Below, piece by piece: positions 9,175-30,545 of a stretch of DNA of 64,000 bases. Made by a program: the position numbers and the translations under genes. The stretch covers positions 124,001 through 188,000 of the IMG/VR virus record IMGVR_UViG_3300023179_005186; one strand, written 5' to 3'. The notes under the pieces were generated by a model. It was not told the DNA's origin and did no database searches. It saw only the letters and a program-made list of their open reading frames with translations. Position 1 is the stretch's first letter. Each line of letters begins with the position of its first letter.

Positions 9175-9298
9175 AACTTTATTAAATTATTAGTTAAAAC
9201 TAATAAAATTTTTTTTTTTTCTAATAGTAATAATTACTAATAATTATTAAAAAAATTGTATTAATTTAAATATAGATTATTATTTATATATATAATCC

Positions 9299-12200: not shown

Positions 12201-15200
12201 ATCAGTCAATATTAATATATAATATGTTAAATGAAAATAAAAACTTTATACATTTAGATAATCATTCTGCGACATACTTGGCTACAATAACAAAAGTATT
12301 TTTAAATGGTGAATGGATTGGTATGACAGATAATCCAGATGATTTATATCAAGAATTACGAACTTTAAAACAGAATGGTATTATTTTAAGAACAAATGGT
12401 ATAACTCTCGATTATACAAGAGGTGAAATAAGAATTTATACAGAGTCTGGGCGTTTATACAGACCGGTATTTACTGTTAAAAATAATAAATTATTAATGA
12501 CGGATAAGATAATTGATGATATTTGCAAGGATTCAAAATTAAAAGGATTAAATAAATTTGATGCATTAATTACTAAATATCCAGAAACAATTGATTATTT
12601 AGATATGGAAGAACAGTTTTATGCATTAGTTGCAGATTATAAAGATAAAGTTTTAGAAATGAAATCTAGAGAATTAAATGTATTTGATGATACAAACGAA
12701 CCTATTATTAATCGTTATGATAAATCAATGATTATGAAATATACTCATTGTGAATTTCATCCAACTGTTATCCTTGGTATTATTGCTGGAAATATTCCTT
12801 TTGCAAATCATAATCAAGGACCAAGAAATATTTTTCAGTATGCACAAGGTAGACAAGCGATGGGTATTTATTCAAGTAATTATCGTGATAGATTGGATAT
12901 TTCATATATTCTTTATCATACACAAAAACCGTTAGTAAATACTAAGATAGCAAAATATGTCCACACAGATATTTTACCTTGTGGTGAAAATGCTGTAGTA
13001 ATGATCGGATGTTATACAGGATATAATCAGGATGATTCTATTATATTTAATCAAACATCTATAGATCGTGGATTATTTAGATCTACATCACTTAAAAAGT
13101 GGAGTTCAAAGATTGAGAAAAATCAATCTACATCACAAGATGATATATTTATGAAACCAGATATTTCAAAACTTACAGGAACAAGACATGCTGTTTATGA
13201 TAAATTAAATGACAAGGGATATGTTCCTGAAGAAACTGTTGTTGAAAATGGAGATGTAATTATTGGAAAAGTAACTCCAATACAACCAGCTCCAGGATCT
13301 AACAAATGTTTTAAAGATTCTTCTGAAATCTATAAATCTCAAGAAACTGCTATAATCGATAAAGTTTTTACGGGAATACATGATTCTGAAGGTTATGAAA
13401 TGATTAAAATTAGAACAAGATCCGAAAGAATTCCAAAGACAGGAGATAAATTTTGTTGTTTTAGCCCAGATCATGACATTTTAACAGAACGTGGTTGGAT
13501 TGGAATAAGTGAAGTAACAAATATGGATAAAGTTGCTTGTTTAAATTATGGAATATTAGAATATAATAATCCAATTCAAGTAATGAATTATGATTATGAA
13601 GGTAAAATGTACTTATTAGATGCATATCAAGTAAATTTAAAAGTAACTCCAAATCACAGAATGTATGTTAAAAAAATAAATTCTGAAAATTATAATATAG
13701 AATTAGCAGAAAATATATTTAATCAGACAAGAATATATAAAAAAAATGCAAATAATTATTTAAATAATGATAAACATCAATTATTAAGTTACTATAATGA
13801 GACTTTAAAAATTAATGTTCACTATCCAACTGGATTTATTCTTAAAAATAATGAAGATATTAATGATATTAAAATATTAGATATTAATGCATGGTTATCA
13901 TTTTTTGGAATATGGATGGCGGAAGGATTTGCTGCTAAAACAGCAAGATCTTTACAAGTAAGTTTTGCCGCTCATAAAAAACGAGTTAAAGATGAGTTAA
14001 CACGTGTTTGTAATATTCTTGGTTATGAAATTAATAAAAAAAAAGATAAATCGTACTCACTAGAAGAAGATATTTGGATAATATCTGATAAAAAGTTGAG
14101 GAAGTATATGGAACCCTTGAGTGTTGGTGCTGTGAATAAATCATTACCAGATTGGGTATGGTATTTAACAAAAGAACAATGTAATTTATTAATTGATGGT
14201 ATGATGTTAGGTGATGGTTATAAAATTAAAGGAACAACTACACGAAGATATGATACATCATCATTAAAATTAGCAAATGATTTTCAAAAACTATGTTTAC
14301 ATGCTGGAATTTGTTGTAATTTAAAACTTAAATATAAAGCTGGTAATGAAACTATTATTAAAACTCCTGGTAGAGAAGGAGAAAAAATAAAATCAACAAG
14401 AGATGCGTATAGATTAACTATTATTTCAAAATCAGAACAAACAGTAAATATTAATAAATTTAATGATTCTTATATTGATTATAAAGGTAAAGTTTATTGT
14501 TGTAGTGTTCCAGGTGAAGGAATAATTTATGTTAGAAGAAACGGGATTCCAATTTGGTGTGGAAACTCGAGACATGGGCGAGTAACTTTTACCCATAACA
14601 GGAGGCTGTGGAATCGTGAGGTTCCAATTCAAGTATTGAATTAACAATACACAGTGTTACCTTCTAGTCGGCAATATCGTCGGGCTAATATTGAATTTTT
14701 CAATATCAAGTGATGATATTGTGGTACGTCAGAGACATCTGATACCTAGGATAGTATAATCATACTATTTGAACAGGCAAGAATTGTGAAAACGGTCAAA
14801 ATCTCAAGAAAACCTTTGAGACAAGACCGTCGGTGTAGTAAAGTCGCGAGGCTTTATGATATCGCGATCGACTGGGTCACAGTTCGGTGAAGTTATAAAT
14901 TAACTTTGCTTAATGTACAGTCAGCCCCCGTGGTGATACGGTGCTACAATGATCAGGATATATTGAAAAGATATTCTAGGGAAGTTGTAGGTTAAACAAG
15001 ATATATATTTACTTGTTTAATGATTAGCGAAAAAGGTACTATCGGTCTAACTTTACATCAATCAGACATGCCCTTTACTAAAGAGGGTATTAGTCCAGAT
15101 TTAATTATTAATCCAAATGCGATCCCGAGTGAAATTCGCTCATGTGGTCTAGCAATAGATTGCAAGTCTCTTATTTATAAAATAAGAGGCAACACTTTCA

Positions 15201-16845
15201 AATTGCGGGAAAGTCGTCAATAAGTATACAAATAAAATTGTCTTAAAAATAAAAATATATTATTAAATAATAAAATGTTAAGAGTGTGCAAAATATGTAA
15301 TATTGAAAAAGATATTAATGAGTTTAGATGCAAACTTGTTAAAACTTAAAAGTAAATGATCCTGAAAAATATAAAGAAATAAAAACTAAACAATCTAATA
15401 GAGACAAAAACTACTATGATAATAATAAAGATAGAGTTAATCAAAGAAATGTTTTAACTGGACAAATATTTCACCATTATTAGCATCTGAAAACAGAAAA
15501 AAAATAATAAAATATATGATACACATATTTTAAGACAAGAATTAAGAGTATACTTATTTAAACAGATTATGGATACCGCATCTATATCTAGCGATATAGA
15601 GTAGCAGGTGGTATAATGGCCATCGGATGGTAAAAACTCCATGATACACGGTGACAATCCGCAACCAAGATTTCCAATAATGGGAATAAGGCTCAGAGAC
15701 TAGACGGAAGTGGGCTTGTTTTATTTTAATAAGACAGGCTTAAGGTATAGTCCACCCCCTAATGAAAGTTAGGGGATTAAGTGAGAATGACGATCGCACA
15801 ATTAATTGAATGTTTAATTGGAAAAGTTGCTGCAATTAAAGGTTTAGAAACAGACGGCACATCTTTTAACCAAATAGATATAGAAACAATAAAAAATGAA
15901 TTAGAAAAATTAGGTTATGAAAAAAATTGTAATGAATACTGTTATAATGGTATGACAGGTCAAAGACTTAAAATACCAATGTTTATTGGTCCTACTTATT
16001 ATCAAAGATTAAAACATCTAACCGCTGATAAAATACATTGTTTAACAGGTGATCATGATGTTTTAACAGAAAATGGATGGATAAATATTCAAAATATAAC
16101 TAAAGAAATAAAAGTTTTAACTTTAAAGTCAGATATAGAATTATATGATTATCCAAATCATGTTTATAAATATGAAGATTTAAATGAAAAAATTCTGTAT
16201 CATGTTAAAAATGAAGATATTGATACAATTATGACTGAAGAACATAGAGTTTATATTAATAATAATTTATTAATTAAAATAAATCAACTTGATCATAAAA
16301 ATAATACAATATATAAATGGTATAATAGAAGTAGTTCATTTAATGTTAATCATACTACTGATATCACTATTTATCAATCTAAAGATAATGTTTATTGTTT
16401 AAGTGTTCCAAGTGAAATATTTTATGTTAGAAGAAATGGTAAAGAGTTTTGGACTGGTAATTCTAGAGCTCGAGGACCAAATACAATGCTTACACATCAA
16501 CCACCAGAAGGTAGATCAAAAGATGGTGGATTACGTTGCGGTGAAATGGAGCGTGATTCAATTATAGCACATGGAATGAGTAAATTCTTAAAAGAAAGAT
16601 TTTTAGATGTTTCTGATGCTTACTCATGTTATGTATGTGATATTTGTGGTTTATTCGCACAGCGTGATAAAAAGAAAGATAACAAAACAGTACCACAAAA
16701 TACAGATATTTACAAATGCATTAATTGTAAGAATAAAACAAAAATTTCAAAGGTAATTATTCCTTATGCATTTAAATTACTAATTCAAGAATTAATGTCA
16801 ATGAACATTGCACCAAGAATTAGAACTAAACAATATAGTTTATAA
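9299..16845 (+). CDS. RPB2: RNA polymerase second-largest subunit; exons 9299-14579, 15030-15130 and 15784-16845; three inteins
   Basis: Motifs [56 protein letters not shown] and [11 protein letters not shown]. Joined exons give 6444 nt (2147 aa); removing 954 aa of inteins leaves 1193 aa, a normal RPB2 size. Confidence 0.95.
10787..12115 (+). mobile_element. Intein 1 in RPB2 (443 aa) with a degenerate LAGLIDADG endonuclease
   Basis: GFL|CLTGDTEV...CTPDH...VYDFET...YTSN|CPVESPE. Both LAGLIDADG-like helices have Asn at the acidic position (NIANG, IAGNG). Confidence 0.93.
13457..14566 (+). mobile_element. Intein 2 in RPB2 (370 aa) with a LAGLIDADG endonuclease
   Basis: GDKFC|CFSPDHD...VTPNH...FFGIWMAEG...[10 protein letters not shown]...WCGN|SRHG. 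Confidence 0.93.
14580..15029 (+). mobile_element. Group I intron 1 in RPB2 (450 nt, ORF-less)
   Basis: Removal restores H-G-Q-K-G-T (ggg c|aa aaa ggt) and the intron ends in G. P1 atgggc/acccat; P7-like gactg...cagtc in atcgactggg / taatgtacagtcag; acggtc/gaccgt stem. Confidence 0.88.
15131..15783 (+). mobile_element. Group I intron 2 in RPB2 (653 nt)
   Basis: Removal restores IPS|RMT. The exon ends in U paired with G15138 (gagt/gctc) and the intron ends in G. Classic P (aaattgcgggaa), Q (aatccgcaacc), R (tcagagacta) and S (aaggtatagtc) elements. Confidence 0.93.
15275..15503 (+). pseudogene. Decayed intron-encoded HNH/Zn-finger homing endonuclease
   Basis: [17 protein letters not shown]...stop (15275-15349) and, in another frame, [18 protein letters not shown] (15450-15503); the central part is missing. 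Confidence 0.7.
16039..16461 (+). mobile_element. Mini-intein 3 in RPB2 (141 aa, no endonuclease)
   Basis: DKIH|[14 protein letters not shown]...MTEEH...VYCLSVP...[11 protein letters not shown]|SRARGP. Confidence 0.93.
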
Positions 16846-18462: not shown

Positions 18463-18503
18463 TTTTTTAATATCTTACTAAAATAACTATTTAATTTAGT
18501 AAA

Positions 18504-20170: not shown

Positions 20171-21238
20171 TTATAAATATTTATTATGTACTTCAATACA
20201 ATTTGAATATTTTATATTTGATTTTATTTTATCTATAGTTGTTACACCAATATCATAAATAATTTTATAATCATAATAGTTTGTTAAAATATATTTTATA
20301 TTCATTGCATGAAAAAAACCAGAATTTATTAAAATTATATCACTTTCCAAATAATTAGTTAAGATTATTGTATAAAATTCCATAATACTATTTATTATAT
20401 GATCAAATAAATCTAATACATTATATTCAAATATAGATGTTGAATATGGAAAACCAACATCAACAGAATATTCTAATTTTGTTAAAGTATTTATAAAATC
20501 CTTTATTAATACTTTTTTATTAGGCAATACATATTTTATTAATAATAGTTCAACTGCAGATTTTAATTTTATATAATAATCACTATTTTTAAATACATCA
20601 AAAACTTTCTTAATCCACATTATATTTGTATCAGATTCTGATAAATTTGAATAATCAATTGTTGAATTTAAATTTTTAACCAATTCATTTGATTTGTTTA
20701 ATTTATTTAATAAAGATAATTTATAAAAATCTTCTAAACTAATTAAATTAAATATAAAAAGTATATTTCTAAAATAATTAGGTGTTAAGTAATTTATACT
20801 TTCAAAATAACTATCATTATTATAATTTATAATCATTTCATCTATTGATACATCAAATAAACATAATCTAATATCAATCGGAAATGTTTTACATATTTTT
20901 GTATAATAACATTTTTTTTTAGATTCAGCATAATGTTTTCTAAATTTAATAATATGAGTTGAATCATCCCAAAGACTTAAAATTTTAGTTTCAGATGATA
21001 TTAATGGTTCCTCTAATAAAAACATAATATTTTGATATTTATTTTCTAATTTATGATAAATTTCATCTAAAAAATTTATATTTCCACTACAATATATTTT
21101 ATTAGAATGATCATCAAAAAATAAATATATTTTTTTATTCATTTTTGAATTAAATAAAATTGTTAATCCTATCGCTCCTGATATTTTAGTTATATCAGAT
21201 TTAACAATTTTATATTTTGTTAATAAATTATTATTCAT
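20171..21238 (-). CDS. Hypothetical protein, paralog of 18504-19739
   Basis: ISGAIG...LFFDDH...FLLEE...DIR...SGFFH. Confidence 0.75.
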   Translation of the reverse strand: MNNNLLTKYKIVKSDITKISGAIGLTILFNSKMNKKIYLFFDDHSNKIYCSGNINFLDEIYHKLENKYQNIMFLLEEPLISSETKILSLWDDSTHIIKFRKHYAESKKKCYYTKICKTFPIDIRLCLFDVSIDEMIINYNNDSYFESINYLTPNYFRNILFIFNLISLEDFYKLSLLNKLNKSNELVKNLNSTIDYSNLSESDTNIMWIKKVFDVFKNSDYYIKLKSAVELLLIKYVLPNKKVLIKDFINTLTKLEYSVDVGFPYSTSIFEYNVLDLFDHIINSIMEFYTIILTNYLESDIILINSGFFHAMNIKYILTNYYDYKIIYDIGVTTIDKIKSNIKYSNCIEVHNKYL

Positions 21239-21335
21239 AACTCTTAATATATAAACAATTATATTATTTTTTTATAAATAAATATAAAAAAATTTGTGTA
21301 ATTATATACTTTTATAAATTTATTTCTAATAAATT

Positions 21336-22016
21336 TTATGTTTTTGCCTTGTTATCCTTTGACTTTACAACTAAGCGATAAGCAGTATTTTCAACAGTCA
21401 TAACTGAAGGTCTAATTATTTTTACTATATCTCCTGGTTTCATATTATAATACTTTGCAACTGGATCAGTAGTTCTTATAATCATCATATCTCTTTTTTT
21501 GGCACGATATGCTTGTAAAACATTATCGGTTTCTTCCTTAGATAATACAATGTGTGTAGGTACTAAAACATGTTCTACAATATTAATCATCAAATGATTT
21601 ATTTTAAAAACTTCAGTTTGAGTATCATAACTTTCAATTATATTTTCTGATTTTTGATTTATATCTTGAACAATTAATATTTTATATTCTGTATCATATT
21701 TACTTATAAACTCACCAATTGGTGAGTTTTTATTTACTGAAGTTATTTTATAATCAAATATTTTAACATAAATTTTTTTATTTTTTATTGTTGTGTTATA
21801 ATTGGAATCATTATCTAATTCTATCATATATTCTTGATCATCATTATCATCTTTTATTATTTTTTTAATAATTTTTTCCATTGATTCTTTATTAATTAAA
21901 TATCTATTATGCAATATTTTAATTAAATTTATTTTTACTTCATTTATTTGTTGATAATGACTTTTTTCAATTGGCAATAATTCAGGAATAAATGAATTTA
22001 TATCTATATTTGACAT
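21336..22016 (-). CDS. RPB5: RNA polymerase subunit 5
   Basis: NIVEHVLVPTH...DPVAKYYNMKPGDIVKIIRPS...YRLV. Confidence 0.93.
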   Translation of the reverse strand: MSNIDINSFIPELLPIEKSHYQQINEVKINLIKILHNRYLINKESMEKIIKKIIKDDNDDQEYMIELDNDSNYNTTIKNKKIYVKIFDYKITSVNKNSPIGEFISKYDTEYKILIVQDINQKSENIIESYDTQTEVFKINHLMINIVEHVLVPTHIVLSKEETDNVLQAYRAKKRDMMIIRTTDPVAKYYNMKPGDIVKIIRPSVMTVENTAYRLVVKSKDNKAKT

Positions 22017-22058
22017 TTTATATAATACTATATGTTAAATATATTTTATATATTTAAA

Positions 22059-22101
22059 TCAATTTTTTACTTAACTAATATGACTAGCTAGTAAAAATTG
22101 A
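22059..22101. promoter_or_regulatory. Divergent AAAATTGA promoters (RPB5 and ORF 22138)
   Basis: TCAATTTT at 22059-22066; AAAATTGA at 22094-22101. Confidence 0.75.
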
Positions 22102-22137
22102 TTTTTATTTATAAAAACTAGATATAACCAAGAAATA

Positions 22138-23373
22138 ATGATCATGTTAATACATGAGTTAGAAAAATATTTAATAAAATATATTGAATCTAATGAACCA
22201 AAAATAATATATTTTGGGATCGGAAGTGAATTTTATAATTCAAATAATAAAATAAATTTTTGGAAATCAAATGAAAATCAACAATTTCCTTTATTTTTAC
22301 ATGATTTTAAAGAAAAACATATGGATATACAAATAATTATTATTTTAATTGATATTAATATGAGTTTTACACCATATTTAATAACTGAACCTAATAAATT
22401 TTATTCAAATAGTTGGACAAAAGATGAAGAATATTTAAATATTTTTAGATCTAAACATAAAATAGATGTAATAACCATAAAAGATGAAATTTATTGGGAT
22501 GAATTTGAAAAAGTAAATATTACTGAATTATATAATTTTACAAGATTAATAATTTATTTGAGTGAAATAATTTCAAAATCAGATAACTGTTTATTATTTT
22601 ATCATGAATTTACTGGAAAAAATGTTCATAAATTTGAAAATATGATTAATAATTTTTGTTATAATTTTAATTTTGAAAAAATATGTATTGATATTACAAG
22701 AGGTTCTGATTTTTCATGTTATTTTGACTTGTCAAAACCAGAATCATATCCTATAATAACATATTTTGAAAATAAATTAAAATACATAAATCCAAATATG
22801 TTAAAATTAAAACAAAAAAAAAAAATTTGTACAAAATATAACAAAAATGAATTAAATTATTCAAATATATATTATGATAATGAATTTATATTATATAAAC
22901 AAATTATTCAAGAAAATTTAATAATATTAAAATTATTAAATAATACAATTGTTCCATTTATAAGAATATGTGTAATTGAACCAACATTATTTATTACAAG
23001 AGATATGACTAAATTTATTAAAGAATTTACATATTTAGATTATATACAACAAAATAAAGAAATATCAGAATGTTTAACAAATGCTAAAAAAATTTATTAC
23101 AATATTATTAAATATATTAATAAGAATGATTTTAAATATAAATTAGAATGTAAAATTGATATTAAATTAGATGAAAATTTTAATCAATTAATTAACTGTT
23201 TTTTAGAAAATCTTTATGAAACTATTGATTTAATTATTTTTAAAATTGGTTTAAGTTTTAATATAAAAGAGAATTTAATTTATCAATTATGTTGGAATAT
23301 TAGAAATATTAATGATAAATATAAAATTTCTTCATTAATTCAAAATTATTTTTTAGAAAATAACTTGATATAA
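22138..23373 (+). CDS. Hypothetical protein
   Basis: 411-aa ORF preceded by an early promoter. Confidence 0.75.
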   Translation: MIMLIHELEKYLIKYIESNEPKIIYFGIGSEFYNSNNKINFWKSNENQQFPLFLHDFKEKHMDIQIIIILIDINMSFTPYLITEPNKFYSNSWTKDEEYLNIFRSKHKIDVITIKDEIYWDEFEKVNITELYNFTRLIIYLSEIISKSDNCLLFYHEFTGKNVHKFENMINNFCYNFNFEKICIDITRGSDFSCYFDLSKPESYPIITYFENKLKYINPNMLKLKQKKKICTKYNKNELNYSNIYYDNEFILYKQIIQENLIILKLLNNTIVPFIRICVIEPTLFITRDMTKFIKEFTYLDYIQQNKEISECLTNAKKIYYNIIKYINKNDFKYKLECKIDIKLDENFNQLINCFLENLYETIDLIIFKIGLSFNIKENLIYQLCWNIRNINDKYKISSLIQNYFLENNLI

Positions 23374-23393
23374 ATAATTTACATCTTGAAGAT

Positions 23394-23866
23394 TTAAAAA
23401 TGCCTAACTTCGTAAGCGAGTAAAGTTGCAGACAAAATCTGGCTAACCTAGCAAGCGAGTAAGGTTGCAGACAAAGTCAGGCTAACCTCGCAAGCGAGTA
23501 AAGTTGCAGACAAAGTCAGGCTACCGATTTTTATTATAAAATCTACTTAAAGAAATATTACAAATATATATATTTGTAATGAATAAACCTTTTTAGATTT
23601 GCTATTAATCGATAGCCTGACTTTGTCAGCAACCTGATAAATTAGGCAAATGGTTAGGTTATAAAAAAAAAGTTTATTTTCAATTTTTGATGAAAATGAT
23701 GAACTAAAAAAGATATTACTTATAATGAAAATGATTTACCAGAAGATTTAAGATATTTTACTGAACAAGCTGAACCAGCTAAAATTTAATTATTTACATT
23801 TTGATTATTTTTAATCGATTCATATATAACATATTTTATTTATAAATTCATTTTTATATAAATTAA
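23394..23866 (+). repeat. 473-bp direct repeat, copy 1
   Basis: Identical by eye to 25915-26387 (offset 2521); starts and ends with TTAA. Confidence 0.95.
23404..23523 (+). repeat. Three tandem 39-bp palindromic units (also at 25925-26044)
   Basis: Unit ctaacctcgcaagcgagtaaagttgcagacaaagtcagg; a partial inverted copy lies at 23613-23635. Confidence 0.92.
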
Positions 23867-24558
23867 GTGACATTGAAGCACCAATGATACAAACATTTCT
23901 TGATAGATTTTATAAAAACAGAACTGAAATCCGCATTTTACTTGAACAATATTTATCGCTTTTTGAAAATAATAATGATGAAAACTATTTTGGAATAATT
24001 AATTTAAAGAGTGAGCCTATTAAAATTATAAATAATATTATTAGCGATTTACAATTTATAATTAATCAAAATAGATTGGATATATTATTAGATGATATTA
24101 TAAAGGTGCATAATAATGTTAATATTAAAATACCATGTATGGAAAATTATCTTTATTATGTTATTTTTGAATTACTAAAAAATAGCACTCAAGCTGTTTT
24201 AGATAAAAGTAAAATTGAAAATAACTATAAACCATTTATTAATGTTAACATAAATAGTATTGATAGTAATTATATTCTCATAACAATAGAAGATAATGGT
24301 ATTGGTATAAAAGAAAAAAATATGGAAAAAATATGGTATTATAGTTTTACAACATCATTATTTGATTCTGAAAATATTATTGAAGAGAGTGATTTTAATA
24401 CAATAAGTCCTTTATCAGGTTTGGGATATGGATTACCAATATCTGAAATTTACATAAATTTTTTAAATTCATCTAAAAATAATATAAAAATAAATAGTGT
24501 TTACAAAAAAGGAACGACGGTTTATCTATATGTAAAATGTTATAATGAATATTTATAA
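23867..24558 (+). pseudogene. 5'-truncated pyruvate/branched-chain ketoacid dehydrogenase kinase-like gene (GHKL)
   Basis: IQTFLDRFY..R..IR.L..Q, FELLKNS, IEDNGIGI, YSFTT, LSGLGYGLPIS and GTTVY. The N-terminal helical domain is missing and the frame runs back to the repeat junction. Confidence 0.8.
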
Positions 24559-24582
24559 ATATATAAAGAATTTATTAAATTA

Positions 24583-25719
24583 TTATTTTTCCATCATGTC
24601 TAAATATACATTTATAAGTTCTTTATAATTATTTGCATATAATAATCTTAAAAAATATTTTTCAGGAATATCTATTTTTCTCACTGAACACCATCCAAAA
24701 TATTTTTTAAATAATATTGGATGATAATATCTGAACTCTTCATTTATTTTATATAAAATATTATAAAAATAATCATAATTATTATAAAAAGTAGCTTTAG
24801 TTATTTTTTTATCAATTATTAGTTGATCAATACTTTTACTACTTTTCCTATATTTAAATATATATTGTAAATCTTTTTTATATTCTGGATATAGTTCTCC
24901 ATATTTTTCTATTGCATTTTTGAAAAATATTTCATTTTTATTCATTAGTTTCTTCATACCATTACACCATAAATTATTATTTATCCATGGTGATATCTTT
25001 TTTTTAGATTTAATACAATCTTCTATCATTTTTTCATAACTACTTAATAAACGGTATGTGCAAATAAATATTTCAGTAAAAATATGTTTATCTTTATCTA
25101 TTGAAAACATCTTTTTGTATGGATGTCTTTTATAATTTATACCAAACTTTTCATGAGTAACTTCGCCATAATCTATTGCAACACATTGAATTCCATAAAA
25201 TGGAACTTTGTAATTATTTAATGTAAAATATTTTTTTTTAGTTTTAGTTACCATTATATTTGTACCTACATGTAAATCATTATGAGAATAACCTCCGTTA
25301 TATAATATTAAAATTATTTTTATTATTTGTAATAGTATAGACAATCTTCTTTTTTTTGAAAGATTATATTTAGACTCATATTTATCTAATGTATATTTAC
25401 CACAATAATCCATTAAATATTTAACACATAATTGTGATTTTTTTGTTTTTTCTGTTTTTAATTTATCTGTAATATTTTGATAACAGTCATTATTTATTTC
25501 AAAATTATATAAATTTACAAAAAAACTTTTATCTTCATTATTTAACTTAGATATATAATTAAACAAATCAAGTTCTCTAAATATTTTATTTTTAAAACTT
25601 TTTTTTCTTTCATTGTTTAAAATATGTTCAATTTTTAATGCATATTTTTTATCTTTATATTTTACCAAATATGTTTTACCAAAAGTACCTTCACCTAATT
25701 TTTTTATAATTTTTAACAT
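24583..25719 (-). CDS. Protein kinase-like protein
   Basis: LGEGTFGKTY, ALK, HNDLH...N and IDYG. Confidence 0.85.
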   Translation of the reverse strand: MLKIIKKLGEGTFGKTYLVKYKDKKYALKIEHILNNERKKSFKNKIFRELDLFNYISKLNNEDKSFFVNLYNFEINNDCYQNITDKLKTEKTKKSQLCVKYLMDYCGKYTLDKYESKYNLSKKRRLSILLQIIKIILILYNGGYSHNDLHVGTNIMVTKTKKKYFTLNNYKVPFYGIQCVAIDYGEVTHEKFGINYKRHPYKKMFSIDKDKHIFTEIFICTYRLLSSYEKMIEDCIKSKKKISPWINNNLWCNGMKKLMNKNEIFFKNAIEKYGELYPEYKKDLQYIFKYRKSSKSIDQLIIDKKITKATFYNNYDYFYNILYKINEEFRYYHPILFKKYFGWCSVRKIDIPEKYFLRLLYANNYKELINVYLDMMEK

Positions 25720-25796
25720 ATTATAAAATATAGTTATAATATTTTTATCAAAAAGTATATAAAATATTTTTGATTATAATATATTATAATCAAAAA

Positions 25797-25928
25797 ATGT
25801 CATTTTACCATGAAATTATAGATAATTTATATTTAGGAAGTGTTGAAGCATCAAAAGATGACGACTTTATATACAATAAAAAAATAGATGTTATTGTAAA
25901 TTGTTCAAAAGATCTTAAAAATGCCTAA
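25797..25928 (+). pseudogene. 3'-truncated dual-specificity phosphatase
   Basis: MSFYHEIIDNLYLGS...IDVIVNCSKDL, cut by repeat copy 2; no HCxxGxxR. Confidence 0.75.
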
Positions 25929-26387
25929 CTTCGTAAGCGAGTAAAGTTGCAGACAAAATCTGGCTAACCTAGCAAGCGAGTAAGGTTGCAGACAAAGTCA
26001 GGCTAACCTCGCAAGCGAGTAAAGTTGCAGACAAAGTCAGGCTACCGATTTTTATTATAAAATCTACTTAAAGAAATATTACAAATATATATATTTGTAA
26101 TGAATAAACCTTTTTAGATTTGCTATTAATCGATAGCCTGACTTTGTCAGCAACCTGATAAATTAGGCAAATGGTTAGGTTATAAAAAAAAAGTTTATTT
26201 TCAATTTTTGATGAAAATGATGAACTAAAAAAGATATTACTTATAATGAAAATGATTTACCAGAAGATTTAAGATATTTTACTGAACAAGCTGAACCAGC
26301 TAAAATTTAATTATTTACATTTTGATTATTTTTAATCGATTCATATATAACATATTTTATTTATAAATTCATTTTTATATAAATTAA
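25915..26387 (+). repeat. 473-bp direct repeat, copy 2
   Basis: Identical by eye to 23394-23866. Confidence 0.95.
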
Positions 26388-26407
26388 ATTATATTATATA
26401 AATAATT

Positions 26408-26800
26408 ATATCAGATTACAAACAAAAATATCTTAAATACAAACACAAGTACTTAACATTTAGAAATAATATGTATAAACAAAATTGAGTTTCTAAGGAT
26501 GGAATATATGTATTTTTTATTACTAATAATATAAATAATTGGAACTTATATTTTGAAAAATTTATTTATGTTCTTGTGTGATGTATTTTATGGTTGGTTC
26601 AACTTTAACAAGTATAAATATGTTAAACACTTATAAAACTATATCCAAATGAATTAAATGTTGACACCAATACTTGTAATTTAGTTGCTGTTTTTTCAAA
26701 TAATCTTCCTAGTAAAAACTATAAAGATATTACAGTAGAAAAATTGTAAAACATAAAAAAAGAAATCGAAAAATAAGAATAACCTACAAATTAAAGAAAT
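26408..26800 (+). pseudogene. Decayed tandem paralog of ORF 26938-27639
   Basis: (ATA)SDYKQKYLKYKHKYLT, KDGIYVFF, NTYKT and NTC fragments with stops and frameshifts; 3' limit is approximate. Confidence 0.75.
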
Positions 26801-26937
26801 TAATATTATATCTAATATTAAAAGGTAAAATAACAATAAAAGAACATATAAAGTAAATTAAGAGGGAAAATTATATTATCAATAAATATTTAATTATAAC
26901 AGATTTTTTTATAAAAATAATATATATATAATAAATT

Positions 26938-27639
26938 ATGCCAGATTATGAACAAAAGTATTTTAAATACAAAAATAAGTATTTAACATTAAAAAGTAAT
27001 TTAGAAGCACAAACAGGAGGTAATTATTATATGGATGGATATTATGTTTTCTTCATCTATGATCATGATTATAGTAATCCTGATAATACAGTTGTACCAA
27101 ATGATGACTATAAAAAAGATCAACATTATGGAAGAATAAGCATGGATAATTTTACATCAAAAAAAATAAATAATTGTTCCATGTTTTTTAGAATTAGTGA
27201 TGGTAAGTTAGCATTCAACCGAAATGATTCTTTTAATACTTATAATACAGTTTATCCTAATATATCTAATATATATGCTATTGCACCAAAATTTTCTTCA
27301 CAAGCTGAAAATACGTGTCCTTTTAAATCATTTAGATCATCTCAACTTCCTATTTCATCAAGCATGAATTTTAATTTAGACTTTAATATATTAAAAAGTA
27401 TTATAGATGAAATGAAAACAAATATAGCAGACAAGTCTAATAATTTTAAATCAATTTTAGTAGTTAGAAATACAAATGGTTATGTTCAAGTAAGAGCAAG
27501 GTACAAAGTAGTAGAAGGTACCGTGACACAAACACAGGAAGATAGAACTCATCAAACTACACCTTCTGAAAATACTGCACCTCCTGAAAATATTCCACCT
27601 CCTAAACCAGCAAGACATCAAAATCAAAATCAAAATTAA
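26938..27639 (+). CDS. Hypothetical protein with YxxKYxKYKxKYL..LK N-terminal motif
   Basis: MPDYEQKYFKYKNKYLTLK...QTGG, a leader common in Mimiviridae. Confidence 0.75.
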   Translation: MPDYEQKYFKYKNKYLTLKSNLEAQTGGNYYMDGYYVFFIYDHDYSNPDNTVVPNDDYKKDQHYGRISMDNFTSKKINNCSMFFRISDGKLAFNRNDSFNTYNTVYPNISNIYAIAPKFSSQAENTCPFKSFRSSQLPISSSMNFNLDFNILKSIIDEMKTNIADKSNNFKSILVVRNTNGYVQVRARYKVVEGTVTQTQEDRTHQTTPSENTAPPENIPPPKPARHQNQNQN

Positions 27640-27722
27640 AGAAAAATAAAAATCAAATATTTATTGTTCAATTATAAAAAATTAGCTTTGTACCATATTG
27701 GTGTAAAAAATAATGCTTATAC

Positions 27723-27958
27723 TTATTTATTTAAGATTGATTGAATGCCAAGTGAATAAGCATAAGGAGTATTACCATCAGGACAAGTAGAATCAATATC
27801 AGCATTCCATGTTATAACTCCCAACAAACCTTTATTAACATCAAATGTAGTTGAGTTTAGAGAATCTTCTAAAGAAAGAACTCTTGAGATGTCATCGGGA
27901 ACCAGACATAAGCCCGGAAATCATTTTTGGTTGGATCAACTTTCCAATTATTTAAATA
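27723..27958 (-). pseudogene. C-terminal remnant of a GH18 chitinase-like gene
   Basis: Frameshifted YLNNWKVDPTK / MISGLM / ...KGLLGVITWNADID...DGNTPYAYSLGI*, resembling the GH18 beta7-beta8 GxMxW motif. Confidence 0.55.
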
Positions 27959-28169
27959 ATAGAGTTTGATACAAAATGATACAAAATCATACACACGCAA
28001 ACGTGCAAATTATGATTTTGTTAAGGTGACAATCCTAACTGATTTATTGACAGTTGTCTCATTTTAAATCTTCAAGGTTGTAAAAAGGGTCTTACTCTAA
28101 ATATTTTTTTTAACAAAATTTGAAATTTACTAATAATATTTATAAGTAAATTATTATACATATATAATC

Positions 28170-30545
28170 ATGAGTAAATTATTAATAGTTGAATCTCCTG
28201 GAAAAATAAAAAAAATAACAGAATATTTAGGAAATGATTATATTGTAGCTGCATCAGTTGGACATATTATTGATTTAGATGAAAGATCAATGAGTATTGA
28301 TTTAGAAACTTTTGAACCTCAATATAGAGTTTATCCAAATAAAGTTGATGTTGTTAATAAATTAATAAAACTATCTATTAAAGTTGGAAAAGAAAATGTA
28401 TTTTTAGCTGCCGATGAAGATCGTGAAGGAGAAATGATAGCATGGTCTTGTGCTAAAGAATTAAAATTAAAAAATTCTAAAAGAATTGTTTTTAATTCTA
28501 TAACAGCAAAAGAACTTAAAAATGCTGTTGCAACTCCAAAAGAAATTGATCAAAATTTAGTAAAGGCTCAACAAGCTAGAAGAATTTTAGATAGATTAGC
28601 TGGATATCTAATTAGTCCTATTCTTAAAAAAAATGGTTTTTATGAAGCAAAATCTGCAGGAAGAGTTCAATCTGTTGTAGTAAAAATTGTTGTTGATAAA
28701 GAACGTGAAATAGAAGAATTTTATAAAAAACAAAAATCTACATACTTTTATATCAGTTGTGATATTAATATAAGTGATTATGAATTATCTACAAAATTAG
28801 TTAATAAAAATACTAAAATTGAAATATTAGATAAAGATAATGAAAATTTAGATAATTCTAATAATTTATCTGATGAAGAAACTGATAAAAAATTAAAAAA
28901 TAAAAGAGAAACTAAACAATCTTCAAAAATAAATAATGTTTCAATTAAATCGTATGTTACATTTGATAAATCTGAAGAACAAAATGTTGTTAAATTAATT
29001 AAAGCAATGATGAAAGGTGAATATTCTTTATTAAATAAAACTGAAAAAATTAGAAAAGCAAATGCTCCTCCTCCTTTTACTACTTCTACATTACAACAAT
29101 TAGCTTCACAAAGATTAAATTTAAATGCAAAAGAAACTATGAGTATTGCTCAAAAATTATATGAAGCAGGTCATATAACATATATGAGAACAGATTCAAC
29201 AGCTATATCAGATGAAGCATCAAATTTAATTAAAGATGTTATTAAATCAGAGTATGGATCAGAACATCATGAAAAACATACTTTTGTTAATAAAAAAGCG
29301 AATACTCAAGAAGCTCATGAATGTGTAAGACCAACAAAACCACAATTTGATAACATAGATGCTTCATTTAATGAAAAACGTCTATATAGTATTATTTGGA
29401 AACGTACAATTCAATCACAAATGAAAGCTGCAGAATATCAAAATATTTTGCTTGAAATTCAAATTGATGATAAAAAAAAAATGCTAGAAAATTATAAATT
29501 AGTTGGAACATTAGAGAATTTAATATATGAAGGGTATTTATTAGTTGATAATAAAAAGAAATCTAATCCATTAGATACAAAAAAACTAAAATCTATACAA
29601 TGGATTGATATTTATGGAATTGAAGATACTCAGAAACCACCTACTAGATATAATGATGCTTCATTAATAAATAAAATGGATCCAAAAAATCTTAATATTG
29701 GTAGACCATCGACTTATGCATCATTTATTGAAAAAATACAAGAAAGAAATTATGTAAAAATATGTGATATTGAAGGAAAAAAAATTCAATTAAATAGATA
29801 TAATGCAAATAAATCTGATCTAAAACAAATTAACATGGAAACTAAAGATTTGATTTTAGGAAAAGAAAAGAAAAAATTAGTTCCTACTGAACTTGGTATA
29901 AACGTGACTACATTTTTAGAAAAAAACTTTGAACTATTAATGGATTATAAATTTACAGCAAATATGGAAAAAGAATTAGATGATGTAGCAGAAGGTGAAT
30001 TAAATAATATTAAAATTATAAAAAAATTTTATGAATATATTATTAAATGTCTTAATGAAATTATACCTACTCCAGGTCAAAATCTTTTAACAAATTCTAT
30101 TATTCTAGGTAATTTTAATCAAGAAGATATTAAATTATTAAATGGAAAACATGGAAGATATATTCAATGTGGTAAATTTAATTATAATTTTCTTAAACTT
30201 TTAGAAGAACTTTGTATAAAAGAAAATGAATATGAATCTAAAACTAATTTATTATGTGATAGCATAATTCAAAAAATAAATAATCCTGGGAAACAATGGA
30301 AAATTGGAAAAAATATTTATACACTTGCTAAAGGTCAATTTGGATATTATATAAAAGAAACAAGTTCTTCTAATAAAAAAAATAAAAATTATTCTTTAAA
30401 CTTTATTATTGATAAAATTGCTAAAGAAAATAAAATAGATTTAAAAAATTCTAAATCTATTGATGTAATATTAGATATTATTAATGATCAGCATATTATT
30501 GAAATAACTGAATATTATAAAAATACTAAAAATAATAAAAAATAA
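28170..30545 (+). CDS. topA: DNA topoisomerase IA (bacterial type)
   Basis: LIVESPGK, ADEDREGE, SAGRVQS, GHITYMRTDS (catalytic Tyr), QEAHECVRPT and IGRPSTYA. Confidence 0.96.
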   Translation: MSKLLIVESPGKIKKITEYLGNDYIVAASVGHIIDLDERSMSIDLETFEPQYRVYPNKVDVVNKLIKLSIKVGKENVFLAADEDREGEMIAWSCAKELKLKNSKRIVFNSITAKELKNAVATPKEIDQNLVKAQQARRILDRLAGYLISPILKKNGFYEAKSAGRVQSVVVKIVVDKEREIEEFYKKQKSTYFYISCDINISDYELSTKLVNKNTKIEILDKDNENLDNSNNLSDEETDKKLKNKRETKQSSKINNVSIKSYVTFDKSEEQNVVKLIKAMMKGEYSLLNKTEKIRKANAPPPFTTSTLQQLASQRLNLNAKETMSIAQKLYEAGHITYMRTDSTAISDEASNLIKDVIKSEYGSEHHEKHTFVNKKANTQEAHECVRPTKPQFDNIDASFNEKRLYSIIWKRTIQSQMKAAEYQNILLEIQIDDKKKMLENYKLVGTLENLIYEGYLLVDNKKKSNPLDTKKLKSIQWIDIYGIEDTQKPPTRYNDASLINKMDPKNLNIGRPSTYASFIEKIQERNYVKICDIEGKKIQLNRYNANKSDLKQINMETKDLILGKEKKKLVPTELGINVTTFLEKNFELLMDYKFTANMEKELDDVAEGELNNIKIIKKFYEYIIKCLNEIIPTPGQNLLTNSIILGNFNQEDIKLLNGKHGRYIQCGKFNYNFLKLLEELCIKENEYESKTNLLCDSIIQKINNPGKQWKIGKNIYTLAKGQFGYYIKETSSSNKKNKNYSLNFIIDKIAKENKIDLKNSKSIDVILDIINDQHIIEITEYYKNTKNNKK

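What the first reader, a model, noticed from the sequence alone, without database searches (positions are those of the whole stretch)
23394..26387. Exact 473-bp duplication bracketing a 2048-bp fragment cut mid-gene at both ends
Seen: the interior (23867-25914) starts inside a PDK-like gene and ends inside a phosphatase gene. Both junctions fall on TTAA, and the duplication starts within the TIR core of element A. Inference: very recent capture of a distant DNA piece through a circular or template-switch intermediate, which could be how these elements load cargo. An assembly or amplification chimera is equally possible.
Basis: partly seen in the sequence, partly recalled or inferred. Interest (0 to 1): 0.65.

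Follow-up and report, generated by a model that had tools for sequence, protein, structure and literature searches.

The report
Giant-virus transposon captured gene fragments
Inside a 4.7-kb inverted-repeat transposon in a lake giant virus, a 2-kb piece of the virus's phosphatase-kinase-PDK gene cluster was copied in at two 9-base microhomologies, duplicating 473 bp of the transposon: a caught-in-the-act example of how such elements pick up genes.

Summary
23394-23866 and 25915-26387 are identical (473/473). The 2,048 bp between them start inside a PDK-like kinase gene and end 39 codons into a dual-specificity phosphatase gene.

It is probably not an assembly chimera. Logan contigs of the likely source run carry all three junctions listed for it, and repeat depth (36.6) equals flank (19.9) plus insert (17.7). 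The insert sits at roughly flank depth in three further runs.

Relatives give the "before" state. Two (92-97% DNA identity) have the left gene directly followed by topoisomerase IA, so 23382-28080 is an insertion. It is flanked by TA and ends in inverted repeats of a family found in many giant-virus contigs. That family is linked to IS630/Tc1-like DDE_3 transposases.

Other relatives carry the phosphatase-kinase-PDK cluster intact elsewhere. Their homology runs 9 nt into the repeat at both junctions (chance about 6e-4 each). TTAA is simply part of these microhomologies.

Best reading: a two-step microhomology-mediated template switch inside a non-autonomous transposon, the Pack-TIR type of capture. 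The element also holds a chitinase-like gene fragment.

Still open:
- long-read proof of linkage across the repeat
- the donor copy, which is not in the sequence held
- the exact repair pathway

The parts
22138..23373 (+). Left flanking gene L (411 aa, no Pfam family), conserved next to Rpb5 in relatives
   Evidence: The orthologues are 81-89% identical. In L011, L012, L013 and L014 the L gene is followed directly by topoisomerase IA.
23380..23381 (.). TA dinucleotide flanking the left end of the element (putative target-site duplication)
   Evidence: The empty site in L011 has a single TA here. In one search, the ends of every paired family copy, and of the window's element, are flanked by TA.
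23382..28080 (.). 4,699-bp TIR-bounded, transposase-less element inserted between gene L and topoisomerase IA
   Evidence: It is absent from L011/L012 (95-97% DNA identity) and from L013/L014 (92%), where window ~23381 joins ~28099. The inverted 15-nt core CTTGAAGATTTAAAA occurs only at 23385-23399 (+) and 28062-28076 (-) in the 316-kb contig.
23382..23410 (+). Left terminal inverted repeat (family consensus TA|CACCCTTGAAGATTTAAAAtTGcac)
23394..23866 (+). Repeat copy A1 (473 bp): it starts inside the left TIR and holds a GC-rich hairpin followed by an AT-rich tail
   Evidence: exact identity with 25915-26387. The Logan contig of exactly 473 nt has depth 36.6.
23414..23523 (+). 2.8 tandem copies of a 39-nt GC-rich unit. 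Together with an inverted partial copy at about 23608-23650 they form a long imperfect hairpin.
   Evidence: period 39, 92% matches. (DNA fold -46.3 kcal/mol, z = -6.4). The motif was found nowhere else.
23858..23866 (+). Junction 1 microhomology ATAAATTAA, shared by the end of A and the intact PDK gene of relative L006
   Evidence: The null probability of 9 nt or more is 5.9e-4.
23867..25914 (+). Captured segment B (2,048 bp), one contiguous piece of a DSP-kinase-PDK cluster
   Evidence: 97% identical to L006 over 23858-25729. 89% identical to L093 over 23858-24590 and 24579-25923. Single copy by depth, 17.7 against 19.9 for the flank.
23884..24558 (+). 5'-truncated PDK/BCKDK-like kinase ORF (224 aa from an internal Met). 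The HATPase_c domain is kept and most of the N-terminal domain is lost.
24583..25719 (-). Complete Ser/Thr protein kinase gene (378 aa)
   Evidence: 146 homologues were found, at 95%, 85% and lower identity.
25797..25928 (+). Dual-specificity phosphatase stub: 39 native codons, then LKNA and a stop read from A2
25915..25923 (+). Junction 2 microhomology TTAAAAATG, shared by the intact DSP gene (L093) and the left TIR
   Evidence: Protein P0178 continues ...CSKDLKNEY.
25915..26387 (+). Repeat copy A2 (473 bp). It lacks the outer 12 nt of the TIR.
26388..26930 (+). Decayed tandem paralogue of gene R (psi-R). Its promoter-like leader overlaps the last ~30 nt of A.
   Evidence: 26395-26483 against 26925-27013, 78%. 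(26356-26470 against 26889-27000). (weak protein match).
26938..27639 (+). Gene R (233 aa, no Pfam family), cargo of the element
27741..27959 (-). Fragment of the 3' end of a GH18 chitinase-like gene (older capture)
   Evidence: 77% DNA identity over 219 nt, and 68% protein identity, to the 3' end of the 281-aa gene at contig 307843-308685. That gene has the FDGVDFDIE motif.
28052..28080 (-). Right terminal inverted repeat
28081..28082 (.). TA dinucleotide flanking the right end
   Evidence: It is followed by about 17 nt that L011 lacks, so the duplication cannot be read cleanly.
28170..30545 (+). Right flanking gene, bacterial-type DNA topoisomerase IA
   Evidence: Toprim, Topoisom_bac. Adjacent to L in relatives.

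Best explanation
The window comes from a Mimiviridae-like giant virus assembled from lake water (20% GC; a 316-kb contig that CheckV rates 28% complete).

Between gene L and the topoisomerase IA gene lies a 4.7-kb non-autonomous DNA transposon. It is flanked by TA and bounded by ~25-nt inverted repeats. It belongs to a family scattered through giant-virus metagenome contigs and linked to IS630/Tc1-mariner-type DDE_3 transposases, which this virus encodes elsewhere.

Inside the element, a nascent DNA strand had copied the left end as far as 23866. It then left its template at a 9-nt microhomology (ATAAATTAA) and re-primed in the middle of a PDK-like gene in the DSP-kinase-PDK cluster. It copied 2,048 nt through the kinase gene into the phosphatase gene. 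It left again at a second 9-nt microhomology (TTAAAAATG) and re-primed at the left inverted repeat, 473 nt upstream of where it had departed.

The product is A-B-A: a templated insertion flanked by an exact 473-bp duplication of the element's own sequence. This is the Pack-TIR (gap-filling or FoSTeS/MMBIR) way of loading cargo.

Shown:
- the repeat and the truncated genes
- the empty site and the intact donor-type cluster in relatives
- microhomology at both junctions
- the TIR family

Inferred:
- that a single replicative event with two switches made the structure
- that the hairpin in A, or repair after transposon excision, triggered it
- that the transposases act on these ends
For: 1. Exact 473-bp repeat, with B unique in the contig.

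2. The structure is real.
- In the likely source run the Logan contigs are: flank plus 30 nt of A (depth 19.9); A alone (473 nt, depth 36.6); B with 30 nt of A on both sides (2,108 nt, depth 17.7). A therefore equals L plus B, and B has no branch at either end.
- In three other runs, from two other studies, B, L and R contigs have similar low depths. X2 has a 575-nt contig running L-A-B with no differences. X4 has a contig running L into A.
- A second assembly (ENA, a 524-kb contig) is identical over 21000-29000.

3. Empty site. L011/L012 (95-97% identity) and L013/L014 (92%) join L directly to topoisomerase IA.

4. TIRs. The inverted 15-nt core occurs only at the two ends of the insertion. 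The same ends, preceded by TA, bound elements of 58 bp to 4.9 kb in other giant-virus contigs.

5. Link to a transposase.
- In L042 a transposase HTH stub sits just inside the TIR.
- The contig holds a 6,064-bp sister element with a DDE_3 transposase just inside one end.

6. Donor. L006 has an intact 365-aa PDK next to the kinase. L093 has an intact DSP (179 aa), the kinase and PDK (364 aa), and it comes from the same sample as the empty-site contig L013.

7. Homology to the intact genes runs 9 nt into A at both junctions. Simulated chance of 9 nt or more is 5.9e-4 per junction.

8. Other gene fragments lie in this element and in the sister element.

9. The mechanism matches that described for Pack-TIRs (PMC8277862).
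Against: - No single read or contig is shown to bridge the 473-bp repeat as one molecule. De Bruijn contigs prove junction words, not long-range linkage. An L-A-R locus plus a separate A-B circle at equal copy number would give the same graph.
- The donor cluster was not found in this virus. The missing PDK 5' half, the DSP 3' half and the neighbouring genes are absent from the 316-kb contig and from IMG/VR. B is single copy by depth. A purely copying mechanism therefore needs either later loss of the original or a donor in a co-infecting relative.
- No copy of the element without B was found. A's GC-rich motif occurs nowhere else, so the pre-capture state L-A-R is inferred.
- The microhomologies are read from relatives (97% and 89% identical), not from the true donor.
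- The TA duplication is blurred by a ~17-nt indel on the right flank.
- Transposase activity on these ends is untested.
Confidence: 0.68

Rival explanations
1. Assembly artefact. The virus really has L-A-R. A separate 2,521-bp circular or tandemly repeated A-B molecule in the same sample was threaded into the contig by the assembler's loop resolution.
For: A 473-bp exact repeat exceeds what short reads resolve, and the de Bruijn graph of the two cases is identical. All evidence is contig-based. The two assemblies may derive from the same reads.
Against: B, L and R have nearly equal depth in the likely source run (17.7 against 19.9) and comparable depths in three further runs of two other studies. 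A free circle made of two broken genes and one kinase gene, with no replication function, is unlikely to track the virus 1:1 across samples. Even then the A|B and B|A junctions would be real DNA, so a capture event would still have happened.
Confidence: 0.09
2. Campbell-type integration. A circular DNA carrying B plus one A copy formed first, then integrated into the element by homologous recombination within A.
For: The end product A-B-A is exactly what single-crossover integration of an A-B circle gives. The 473-bp direct repeats would also allow the reverse reaction.
Against: The circle would itself need both microhomology junctions (end of A to mid-PDK, mid-DSP to start of A) to be made beforehand. 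It therefore adds steps rather than replacing the template switches. No excess depth of A-B that would suggest a circle pool was seen.
Confidence: 0.12
3. Genomic accordion. A tandem duplication of a larger local segment that once contained A and the whole DSP-kinase-PDK cluster, followed by two or more deletions that trimmed it to A-B-A.
For: Large DNA viruses do amplify and trim segments. The same element already has a tandem psi-R/R pair.
Against: In all four relatives examined the cluster lies in a different neighbourhood (J-protein, LRR, lipase_3, PCNA), never beside L or topoisomerase IA. The L|topoisomerase site is empty in close relatives. This rival needs at least three events while A1 and A2 stay 100% identical.
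Confidence: 0.05
4. TTAA-specific (piggyBac-like) cut-and-paste insertion of B or of A.
For: Both ends of the repeat read TTAA.
Against: TTAA occurs about 22 times per kb here. Neither A nor B has inverted ends at these junctions. Homology to the intact donor genes continues through TTAA for 9 nt at each junction, which is microhomology and not a duplicated target. No piggyBac-type transposase was seen, and the element's own flanks are TA.
Confidence: 0.01

Closest known systems
Pack-TIR / Pack-MULE elements (gene-fragment capture by TIR transposons; gap-filling and FoSTeST models, Tan et al. 2021, PMC8277862)
   Same: Non-transposon sequence lies between transposon ends. The captured pieces are gene fragments with an identifiable parental locus. 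Microhomology lies at the breakpoints. Capture is by template switching at a break or stalled fork within the element.
   Different: The host is a giant virus, not a plant or an animal. The captured piece is large (2 kb with one whole gene, against a median of 224 bp). The return switch landed upstream of the departure point, so 473 bp of the element itself is duplicated around the filler. The parental copy is not seen in the same genome.
Submariner MITEs of Pandoravirus salinus (Tc1/mariner MITEs in a giant virus; PMC4495683, and the survey PMC6004678)
   Same: Non-autonomous Tc1/mariner-type elements with TA flanks and short TIRs residing in a giant-virus genome.
   Different: Submariner copies are small, lack coding capacity, and trace to a transposon of the amoeba host. 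The family here ranges from 58 bp to about 5-6 kb, carries genes and gene fragments, and has DDE_3 transposase genes in the viral contigs themselves.
MMBIR/FoSTeS complex rearrangements (microhomology-mediated break-induced replication; my own knowledge of Lee, Carvalho and Lupski 2007 and Hastings et al. 2009, not read here)
   Same: A templated insertion joined at short microhomologies, with an accompanying duplication, produced by serial template switches of one nascent strand.
   Different: Described in cellular genomes. The polymerase and repair machinery of a viral factory are unknown here. The event is inferred from its product only.
IS630 / Tc1-mariner (ITm) transposons
   Same: TA flanks, short TIRs, and an HTH plus DDE_3 transposase placed just inside one TIR in related copies (L042 stub; the sister element at contig 290429-296492).
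   Different: This copy has no transposase. The TIR sequence family was not found in the literature searched. No transposition has been demonstrated.
Poxvirus-type gene accordions (my own knowledge of Elde et al. 2012, not read here)
   Same: A recent duplication in a large DNA virus created by recombination, flanked by identical repeats and therefore reversible.
   Different: This is not a head-to-tail amplification of a selected gene. The duplicated unit is transposon sequence, and the inserted DNA comes from a distant locus.

Membership tests
Tc1/mariner-IS630 (ITm) superfamily, non-autonomous member | Terminal inverted repeats at both ends | tested here: met
   The ends at 23382-23410 and 28052-28080 share an exact inverted 15-nt core, unique to these two places in 316 kb. 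The family consensus was recovered from more than 20 giant-virus loci.
Tc1/mariner-IS630 (ITm) superfamily, non-autonomous member | TA target-site duplication | tested here: inconclusive
   Both ends are flanked by TA, and the empty site in L011 has one TA. The ends of every paired family copy are flanked by TA. The 950-bp copy in L013 is TA-flanked where the window has a single TA. Small indels beside both sites prevent a clean reading.
Tc1/mariner-IS630 (ITm) superfamily, non-autonomous member | DDE/D transposase of the superfamily, in the element or available in trans | tested here: met
   There is none inside 23382-28080. The same contig encodes two HTH plus DDE_3 proteins, at 279948-280853 and 290510-291481. 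The second sits just inside a TIR of a sister family. The L042 member has a homologous HTH stub beside its TIR. That they act on these ends is not tested.
Tc1/mariner-IS630 (ITm) superfamily, non-autonomous member | Evidence of mobility (presence/absence between close relatives) | tested here: met
   The element is absent at the orthologous site in L011-L014. Conversely, a 950-bp member is present in L013 and absent at window ~18466.
Pack-TIR (captured host sequence inside a TIR element) | Non-transposon sequence flanked by transposon sequence on both sides, with a parental copy elsewhere | tested here: met
   B lies between A1 and A2 inside the TIRs. Parental-type intact clusters are present in L006 and L093. 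The parental copy in this same virus was not found.
Pack-TIR (captured host sequence inside a TIR element) | Microhomology at breakpoints beyond chance | tested here: met
   9 nt at each junction. The simulated probability of 9 nt or more is 5.9e-4.
piggyBac-like TTAA elements | Element with TIRs flanked by duplicated TTAA, and a piggyBac transposase | tested here: not met
   The units bounded by TTAA have no inverted ends. TTAA is inside the microhomologies and is common, about 22 per kb.
PDK/BCKDK mitochondrial-type protein kinase | N-terminal four-helix domain (BCDHK_Adom3) plus HATPase_c | tested here: not met
   Only profile positions 114-160 of 160 of the N-terminal domain remain. HATPase_c is complete. 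Intact orthologues are 364-365 aa. This is a truncated member.
Dual-specificity phosphatase (DSPc) | Catalytic HCxxGxxR(S/T) loop | tested here: not met
   The ORF stops after 43 residues, before the loop. The intact 179-aa orthologue in L093 has HCLAGNQRS. This is an N-terminal stub only.
MMBIR/FoSTeS product | Made by replicative template switching rather than by breakage and ligation | not testable with these tools
   Only the product is seen. The single-copy depth of B neither proves nor excludes copying.

The most novel reading that the evidence does not exclude
Giant viruses of this clade host their own active family of IS630/Tc1-like transposons that behave as Pack-TIR elements. They pick up whole genes and gene fragments by microhomology-guided template switching in the viral factory, and they move them within and between co-infecting viruses. 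Here the transposon would now carry the virus's only copy of a conserved kinase gene. That would make transposon capture a route of gene relocation and exchange, and one source of the mosaic, ORFan-rich gene content of giant viruses.
Probability: 0.35. Interest if true: 0.72.

Novelty: new variant of a known kind. Interest (0 to 1): 0.58.

Why it matters
How giant viruses gain, shuffle and lose genes is an open question. The known mobile elements of Mimiviridae-like viruses are virophages, transpovirons, inteins, introns and a few insertion sequences.

This locus offers three things:
- a defined TIR family, with presence/absence differences between near-identical natural strains
- a link to virus-encoded DDE_3 transposases
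- a fresh capture event whose donor-type locus and empty site both survive in relatives and whose two junctions can be read base by base

That makes the mechanism of cargo loading testable in a virus. The tests are long reads from the same lakes, a search for further filled and empty pairs, and transposition assays with the viral transposase.

It is also a practical warning. Exact repeats of this kind in metagenome-assembled giant-virus genomes can be real biology rather than misassembly.

Tried and rejected
- Search for other copies of A. The GC-rich 39-nt unit was not found elsewhere in the contig, in IMG/VR or in JGI metagenome contigs other than this record. No pre-capture copy of the element was obtained.
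- Search for the missing halves. Pfam BCDHK_Adom3 and DSPc scans of the whole contig found only the fragments in B and one irrelevant weak hit. The PDK N-terminal half of L006 found only 63-64% relatives in IMG/VR. A degenerate DNA pattern for the phosphatase N-terminus found nothing in IMG/VR.
- Search for the donor neighbourhood. Proteins of L006, L007 and L093 have no counterpart in the 316-kb contig apart from B. The lipase_3 neighbour has no orthologue above 79% identity in the protein collection.
- The 524-kb ENA contig could not be searched as a whole. The DNA of the closest phosphatase homologue, P0178, could not be fetched.
- Gene L found no relatives in IMG/VR through the search for related loci. 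The word search was needed.
- Rfam found no family in A or anywhere in the window at gathering thresholds.
- B as a composite of two pieces was considered, because homology to L006 and L007 stops just upstream of the kinase start. It was rejected when L093 showed the divergent DSP-kinase arrangement intact.
- A piggyBac/TTAA reading was rejected (see rival explanations).
- The X2 contig running L-A-B was first taken as proof of linkage. It was then downgraded, because a unitig in a low-coverage graph does not prove that one molecule carries all three parts.
Full report
**Setting.** The window is bases 124001-188000 of a single 315,722-bp record. The record is an IMG/VR virus contig from a lake-water metagenome. 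It is classed as linear, and CheckV rates it 28% complete. GC content is 20%. The gene content is that of a Mimiviridae-like giant virus: Rpb5, Rpb6, RPB2 with an intein and a group I intron, bacterial-type topoisomerase IA, and DUF5847. It is a virus of protists, not of animals or crops.

**The observation.** Bases 23394-23866 and 25915-26387 are identical at 473 of 473 positions, and the identity stops exactly there.
- The 2,048 bp between them (B, 23867-25914) are unique in the contig. The repeat (A) occurs only twice.
- B opens in the middle of a PDK/BCKDK-like gene. The ORF keeps only positions 114-160 of Pfam BCDHK_Adom3 plus a whole HATPase_c domain. Intact relatives are 364-365 aa.
- B then holds a complete 378-aa Ser/Thr kinase gene on the minus strand.
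- B closes 39 codons into a dual-specificity phosphatase gene. This stub is 88% identical to the start of an intact 179-aa DSPc protein that carries the catalytic loop.

**Real or artefact?** Only Logan contigs, not raw reads, were available.
- In the run that is probably the source (X1), the graph decomposes as expected for a true repeat:
  - a 6,114-nt contig ends 30 nt into A (depth 19.9)
  - a contig of exactly 473 nt is A (depth 36.6)
  - a 2,108-nt contig is B with 30 nt of A on each side (depth 17.7)
- The L|A, A|B and B|A junction words therefore exist in reads. B has no other neighbour than A. The depth of A equals L plus B.
- In three further runs, from two other studies, B is present without differences, at depths like those of the flanks. 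X2 has a 575-nt contig reading L-A-B. X4 has a contig reading L into A.
- A second assembly (ENA, a 524,495-bp contig) is identical over 21000-29000. It may rest on the same reads.
- Caveat: de Bruijn contigs prove junctions, not linkage across 473 bp. An L-A-R locus plus an A-B circle at equal copy number would give the same graph.
- Near 1:1 depth in four runs makes that unlikely. I put the artefact at about 0.09.

**What the surroundings show.** Word searches with the kinase and with gene L gave close relatives whose contigs could be fetched.
- L011/L012 (95-97% DNA identity) and L013/L014 (92%) run from gene L straight into topoisomerase IA. Window position ~23381 is joined to ~28099. The interval 23382-28080 is therefore an insertion of 4,699 bp.
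- The two ends of the insertion carry the same 15-nt core, CTTGAAGATTTAAAA, in inverted orientation. These are its only exact occurrences in 316 kb. Each end is flanked by TA.
- A scan of IMG/VR with the core returned 74 loci. Many are chance hits in phage genes.
- More than 20 giant-virus loci share a longer consensus, TA|CACCCTTGAAGATTTAAAAtTGcac. Several hold inverted pairs bounding units of 58 bp, 111 bp, 240 bp, 300 bp, 410 bp, 1.1 kb, 1.35 kb and 4.9 kb.
- The 1.35-kb unit (L040) carries a T5orf172/MUG113-type ORF. The 4.9-kb unit (L042/L069) carries a 1,392-aa ResIII helicase protein.
- The 4.9-kb unit also has, just inside one TIR, a 96-aa stub homologous to the HTH of IS630/Tc1-like transposases.
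- L013 carries a 950-bp member, TA-flanked, at a place where the window has none. Presence/absence therefore goes both ways between close strains.
- The contig itself encodes two HTH plus DDE_3 transposases, at 279948-280853 and 290510-291481.
- The second lies just inside one end of a 6,064-bp element (290429-296492). That element is bounded by a sister TIR, TA|CACCTTTGCACATTTAAAA, at both ends. It carries 5'-truncated eIF2-gamma-like and GNAT ORFs.
- The island in the window is therefore a non-autonomous member of a Tc1/mariner-IS630-like family that lives in these viruses.

**Where B came from.**
- L006 (97% DNA identity over window 23858-25729) has the kinase next to an intact 365-aa PDK, in a neighbourhood of J-protein, LRR and lipase_3 genes.
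- L093 comes from the same sample as the empty-site contig L013. It has DSP (179 aa, intact), kinase and PDK (364 aa, intact) near lipase_3 and PCNA.
- L093 aligns at 89% to window 23858-24590 and 24579-25923.
- B is therefore one contiguous piece of a DSP-kinase-PDK cluster that sits elsewhere in relatives.
- I had suspected that B was a composite, because L006 and L007 carry a J-protein gene instead of the phosphatase upstream of the kinase. L093 removed that doubt.

**The junctions.** Homology to the intact genes does not stop at the edges of B. It runs 9 nt into A on both sides.
- At A1|B, the last 9 nt of A (ATAAATTAA) equal the PDK sequence of L006. L093 matches 8 of the 9.
- At B|A2, the first 9 nt of A (TTAAAAATG, inside the left TIR) equal the phosphatase sequence of L093. 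The protein of the closest homologue continues ...DLKNEY.
- In 400,000 random pairings of positions in this contig, 9 nt or more of shared sequence at a breakpoint occurred with frequency 5.9e-4. Two such junctions are far beyond chance.
It is not a target-site signature.

**Mechanism.** The simplest history is one replicative event with two template switches.
- A 3' end copying the element from its left end disengaged after 23866.
- It annealed by 9 nt in the PDK gene of the cluster and copied 2,048 nt.
- It disengaged in the phosphatase gene and annealed by 9 nt at the left TIR, 473 nt upstream of its point of departure.
- It then copied A again and went on into the rest of the element.
- This gives a templated insertion flanked by a duplication of exactly the sequence between the re-entry and departure points. 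That is what is seen.
[quoted passage not shown] More generally it corresponds to MMBIR/FoSTeS (my own knowledge).

What triggered the event is inferred.
- A holds 2.8 tandem copies of a GC-rich 39-nt unit and an inverted partial copy. Together they fold into a long hairpin (z = -6.4). This is a plausible site of fork stalling.
- Repair of a double-strand break after excision of the element is the other obvious trigger.

The same element also holds two older features:
- a 219-nt fragment of the 3' end of a GH18-like gene, 77% identical to the gene at contig 307843-308685
- a decayed tandem copy of its cargo gene R

**Open points.**
- B is single copy by depth. Neither the missing halves nor the donor neighbourhood are in the 316-kb contig, in IMG/VR or in the protein collection.
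- There are three possibilities: the original cluster was lost after the capture; B was copied from a co-infecting relative; or the event moved rather than copied the segment. About 70% of the genome is not in hand, so I cannot decide.
- If the original is gone, the transposon now carries the virus's only copy of a kinase that is conserved in many relatives (146 homologues). That might also explain why the unstable A-B-A arrangement persists.
- The truncated PDK ORF keeps an internal start. It sits behind the last ~30 nt of A, which resemble the leader of gene R. Whether it is expressed is unknown.
- The identity of A1 and A2, and the absence of differences in runs dated 2013 to 2018, show that the event is young but older than 2013.

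**Comparison and novelty.**
- MITEs of the Tc1/mariner type are known in Pandoravirus (PMC4495683; survey PMC6004678). Pack-type capture is known in plants and animals (PMC8277862).
- Searches of the paper library for such elements in Mimiviridae or Nucleocytoviricota, or for IS630-type elements with cargo in them, found nothing. That is not proof of absence.
- I therefore rate this a new variant of a known kind. The mechanism is known. The host, the TIR family and the self-duplication around the filler are new.
- Interest 0.58. It is not a new principle. It is an unusually clean, datable and testable case of how giant-virus genomes are reshuffled.

Noticed in passing
contig G000:C1:290429-296492 (outside the window; locus L097 530-6593): A 6,064-bp element bounded by TA|CACCTTTGCACATTTAAAA in inverted orientation. 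A 338-aa HTH plus DDE_3 transposase lies just inside one end. Its cargo includes a 5'-truncated eIF2-gamma-like ORF, a truncated GNAT ORF and a 664-aa ORF with no family. It is the likely autonomous cousin of the element in the finding.
   Followed up: partly
contig G000:C1:279948-280853 (outside the window; locus L098): A second DDE_3 transposase gene, 93% identical to the one in relative L013. A TA|CACCCATTTACAAAAAAATGGGAC motif follows its 3' end in both viruses. No second end was found.
   Followed up: partly
window 9296-16845: The RPB2 gene is interrupted twice. One interruption is an intein (Hint/Intein_splicing, residues ~497-934). The other is a ~1.1-kb GC-richer insert that ends in a group I intron (Rfam RF00028 at 15533-15774, 58 bits) and holds a LAGLIDADG-like ORF fused in frame to exon 1. 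The first whole-window Rfam run at gathering threshold missed the intron.
   Followed up: partly
window ~18466-18469 against L013 4384-5333: Relative L013 has a 950-bp TA-flanked member of the same TIR family here, carrying a 233-aa repeat protein. The window has the empty site.
   Followed up: partly
contig G000:C1:65820-66480 (outside the window): Another GC-rich block in this AT-rich genome, with tandem units (GTGTGGAGCAG...) followed by inverted CTCCAAGTTGGAGCA repeats. In style it resembles the hairpin in A. Not examined.
   Followed up: no
window 28083-28099: About 17 nt (AAAAGGGTCTTACTCT...) lie between the right TA of the element and the sequence shared with L011. Their origin is unknown: a lineage-specific indel, a footprint, or a remnant of an older element end.
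   Followed up: no
locus L093 1146-2873: The relative that keeps the intact DSP-kinase-PDK cluster has a 575-aa TnpB/Fanzor-like gene (OrfB_IS605, Cas12f1-like_TNB) about 4 kb away.
   Followed up: no
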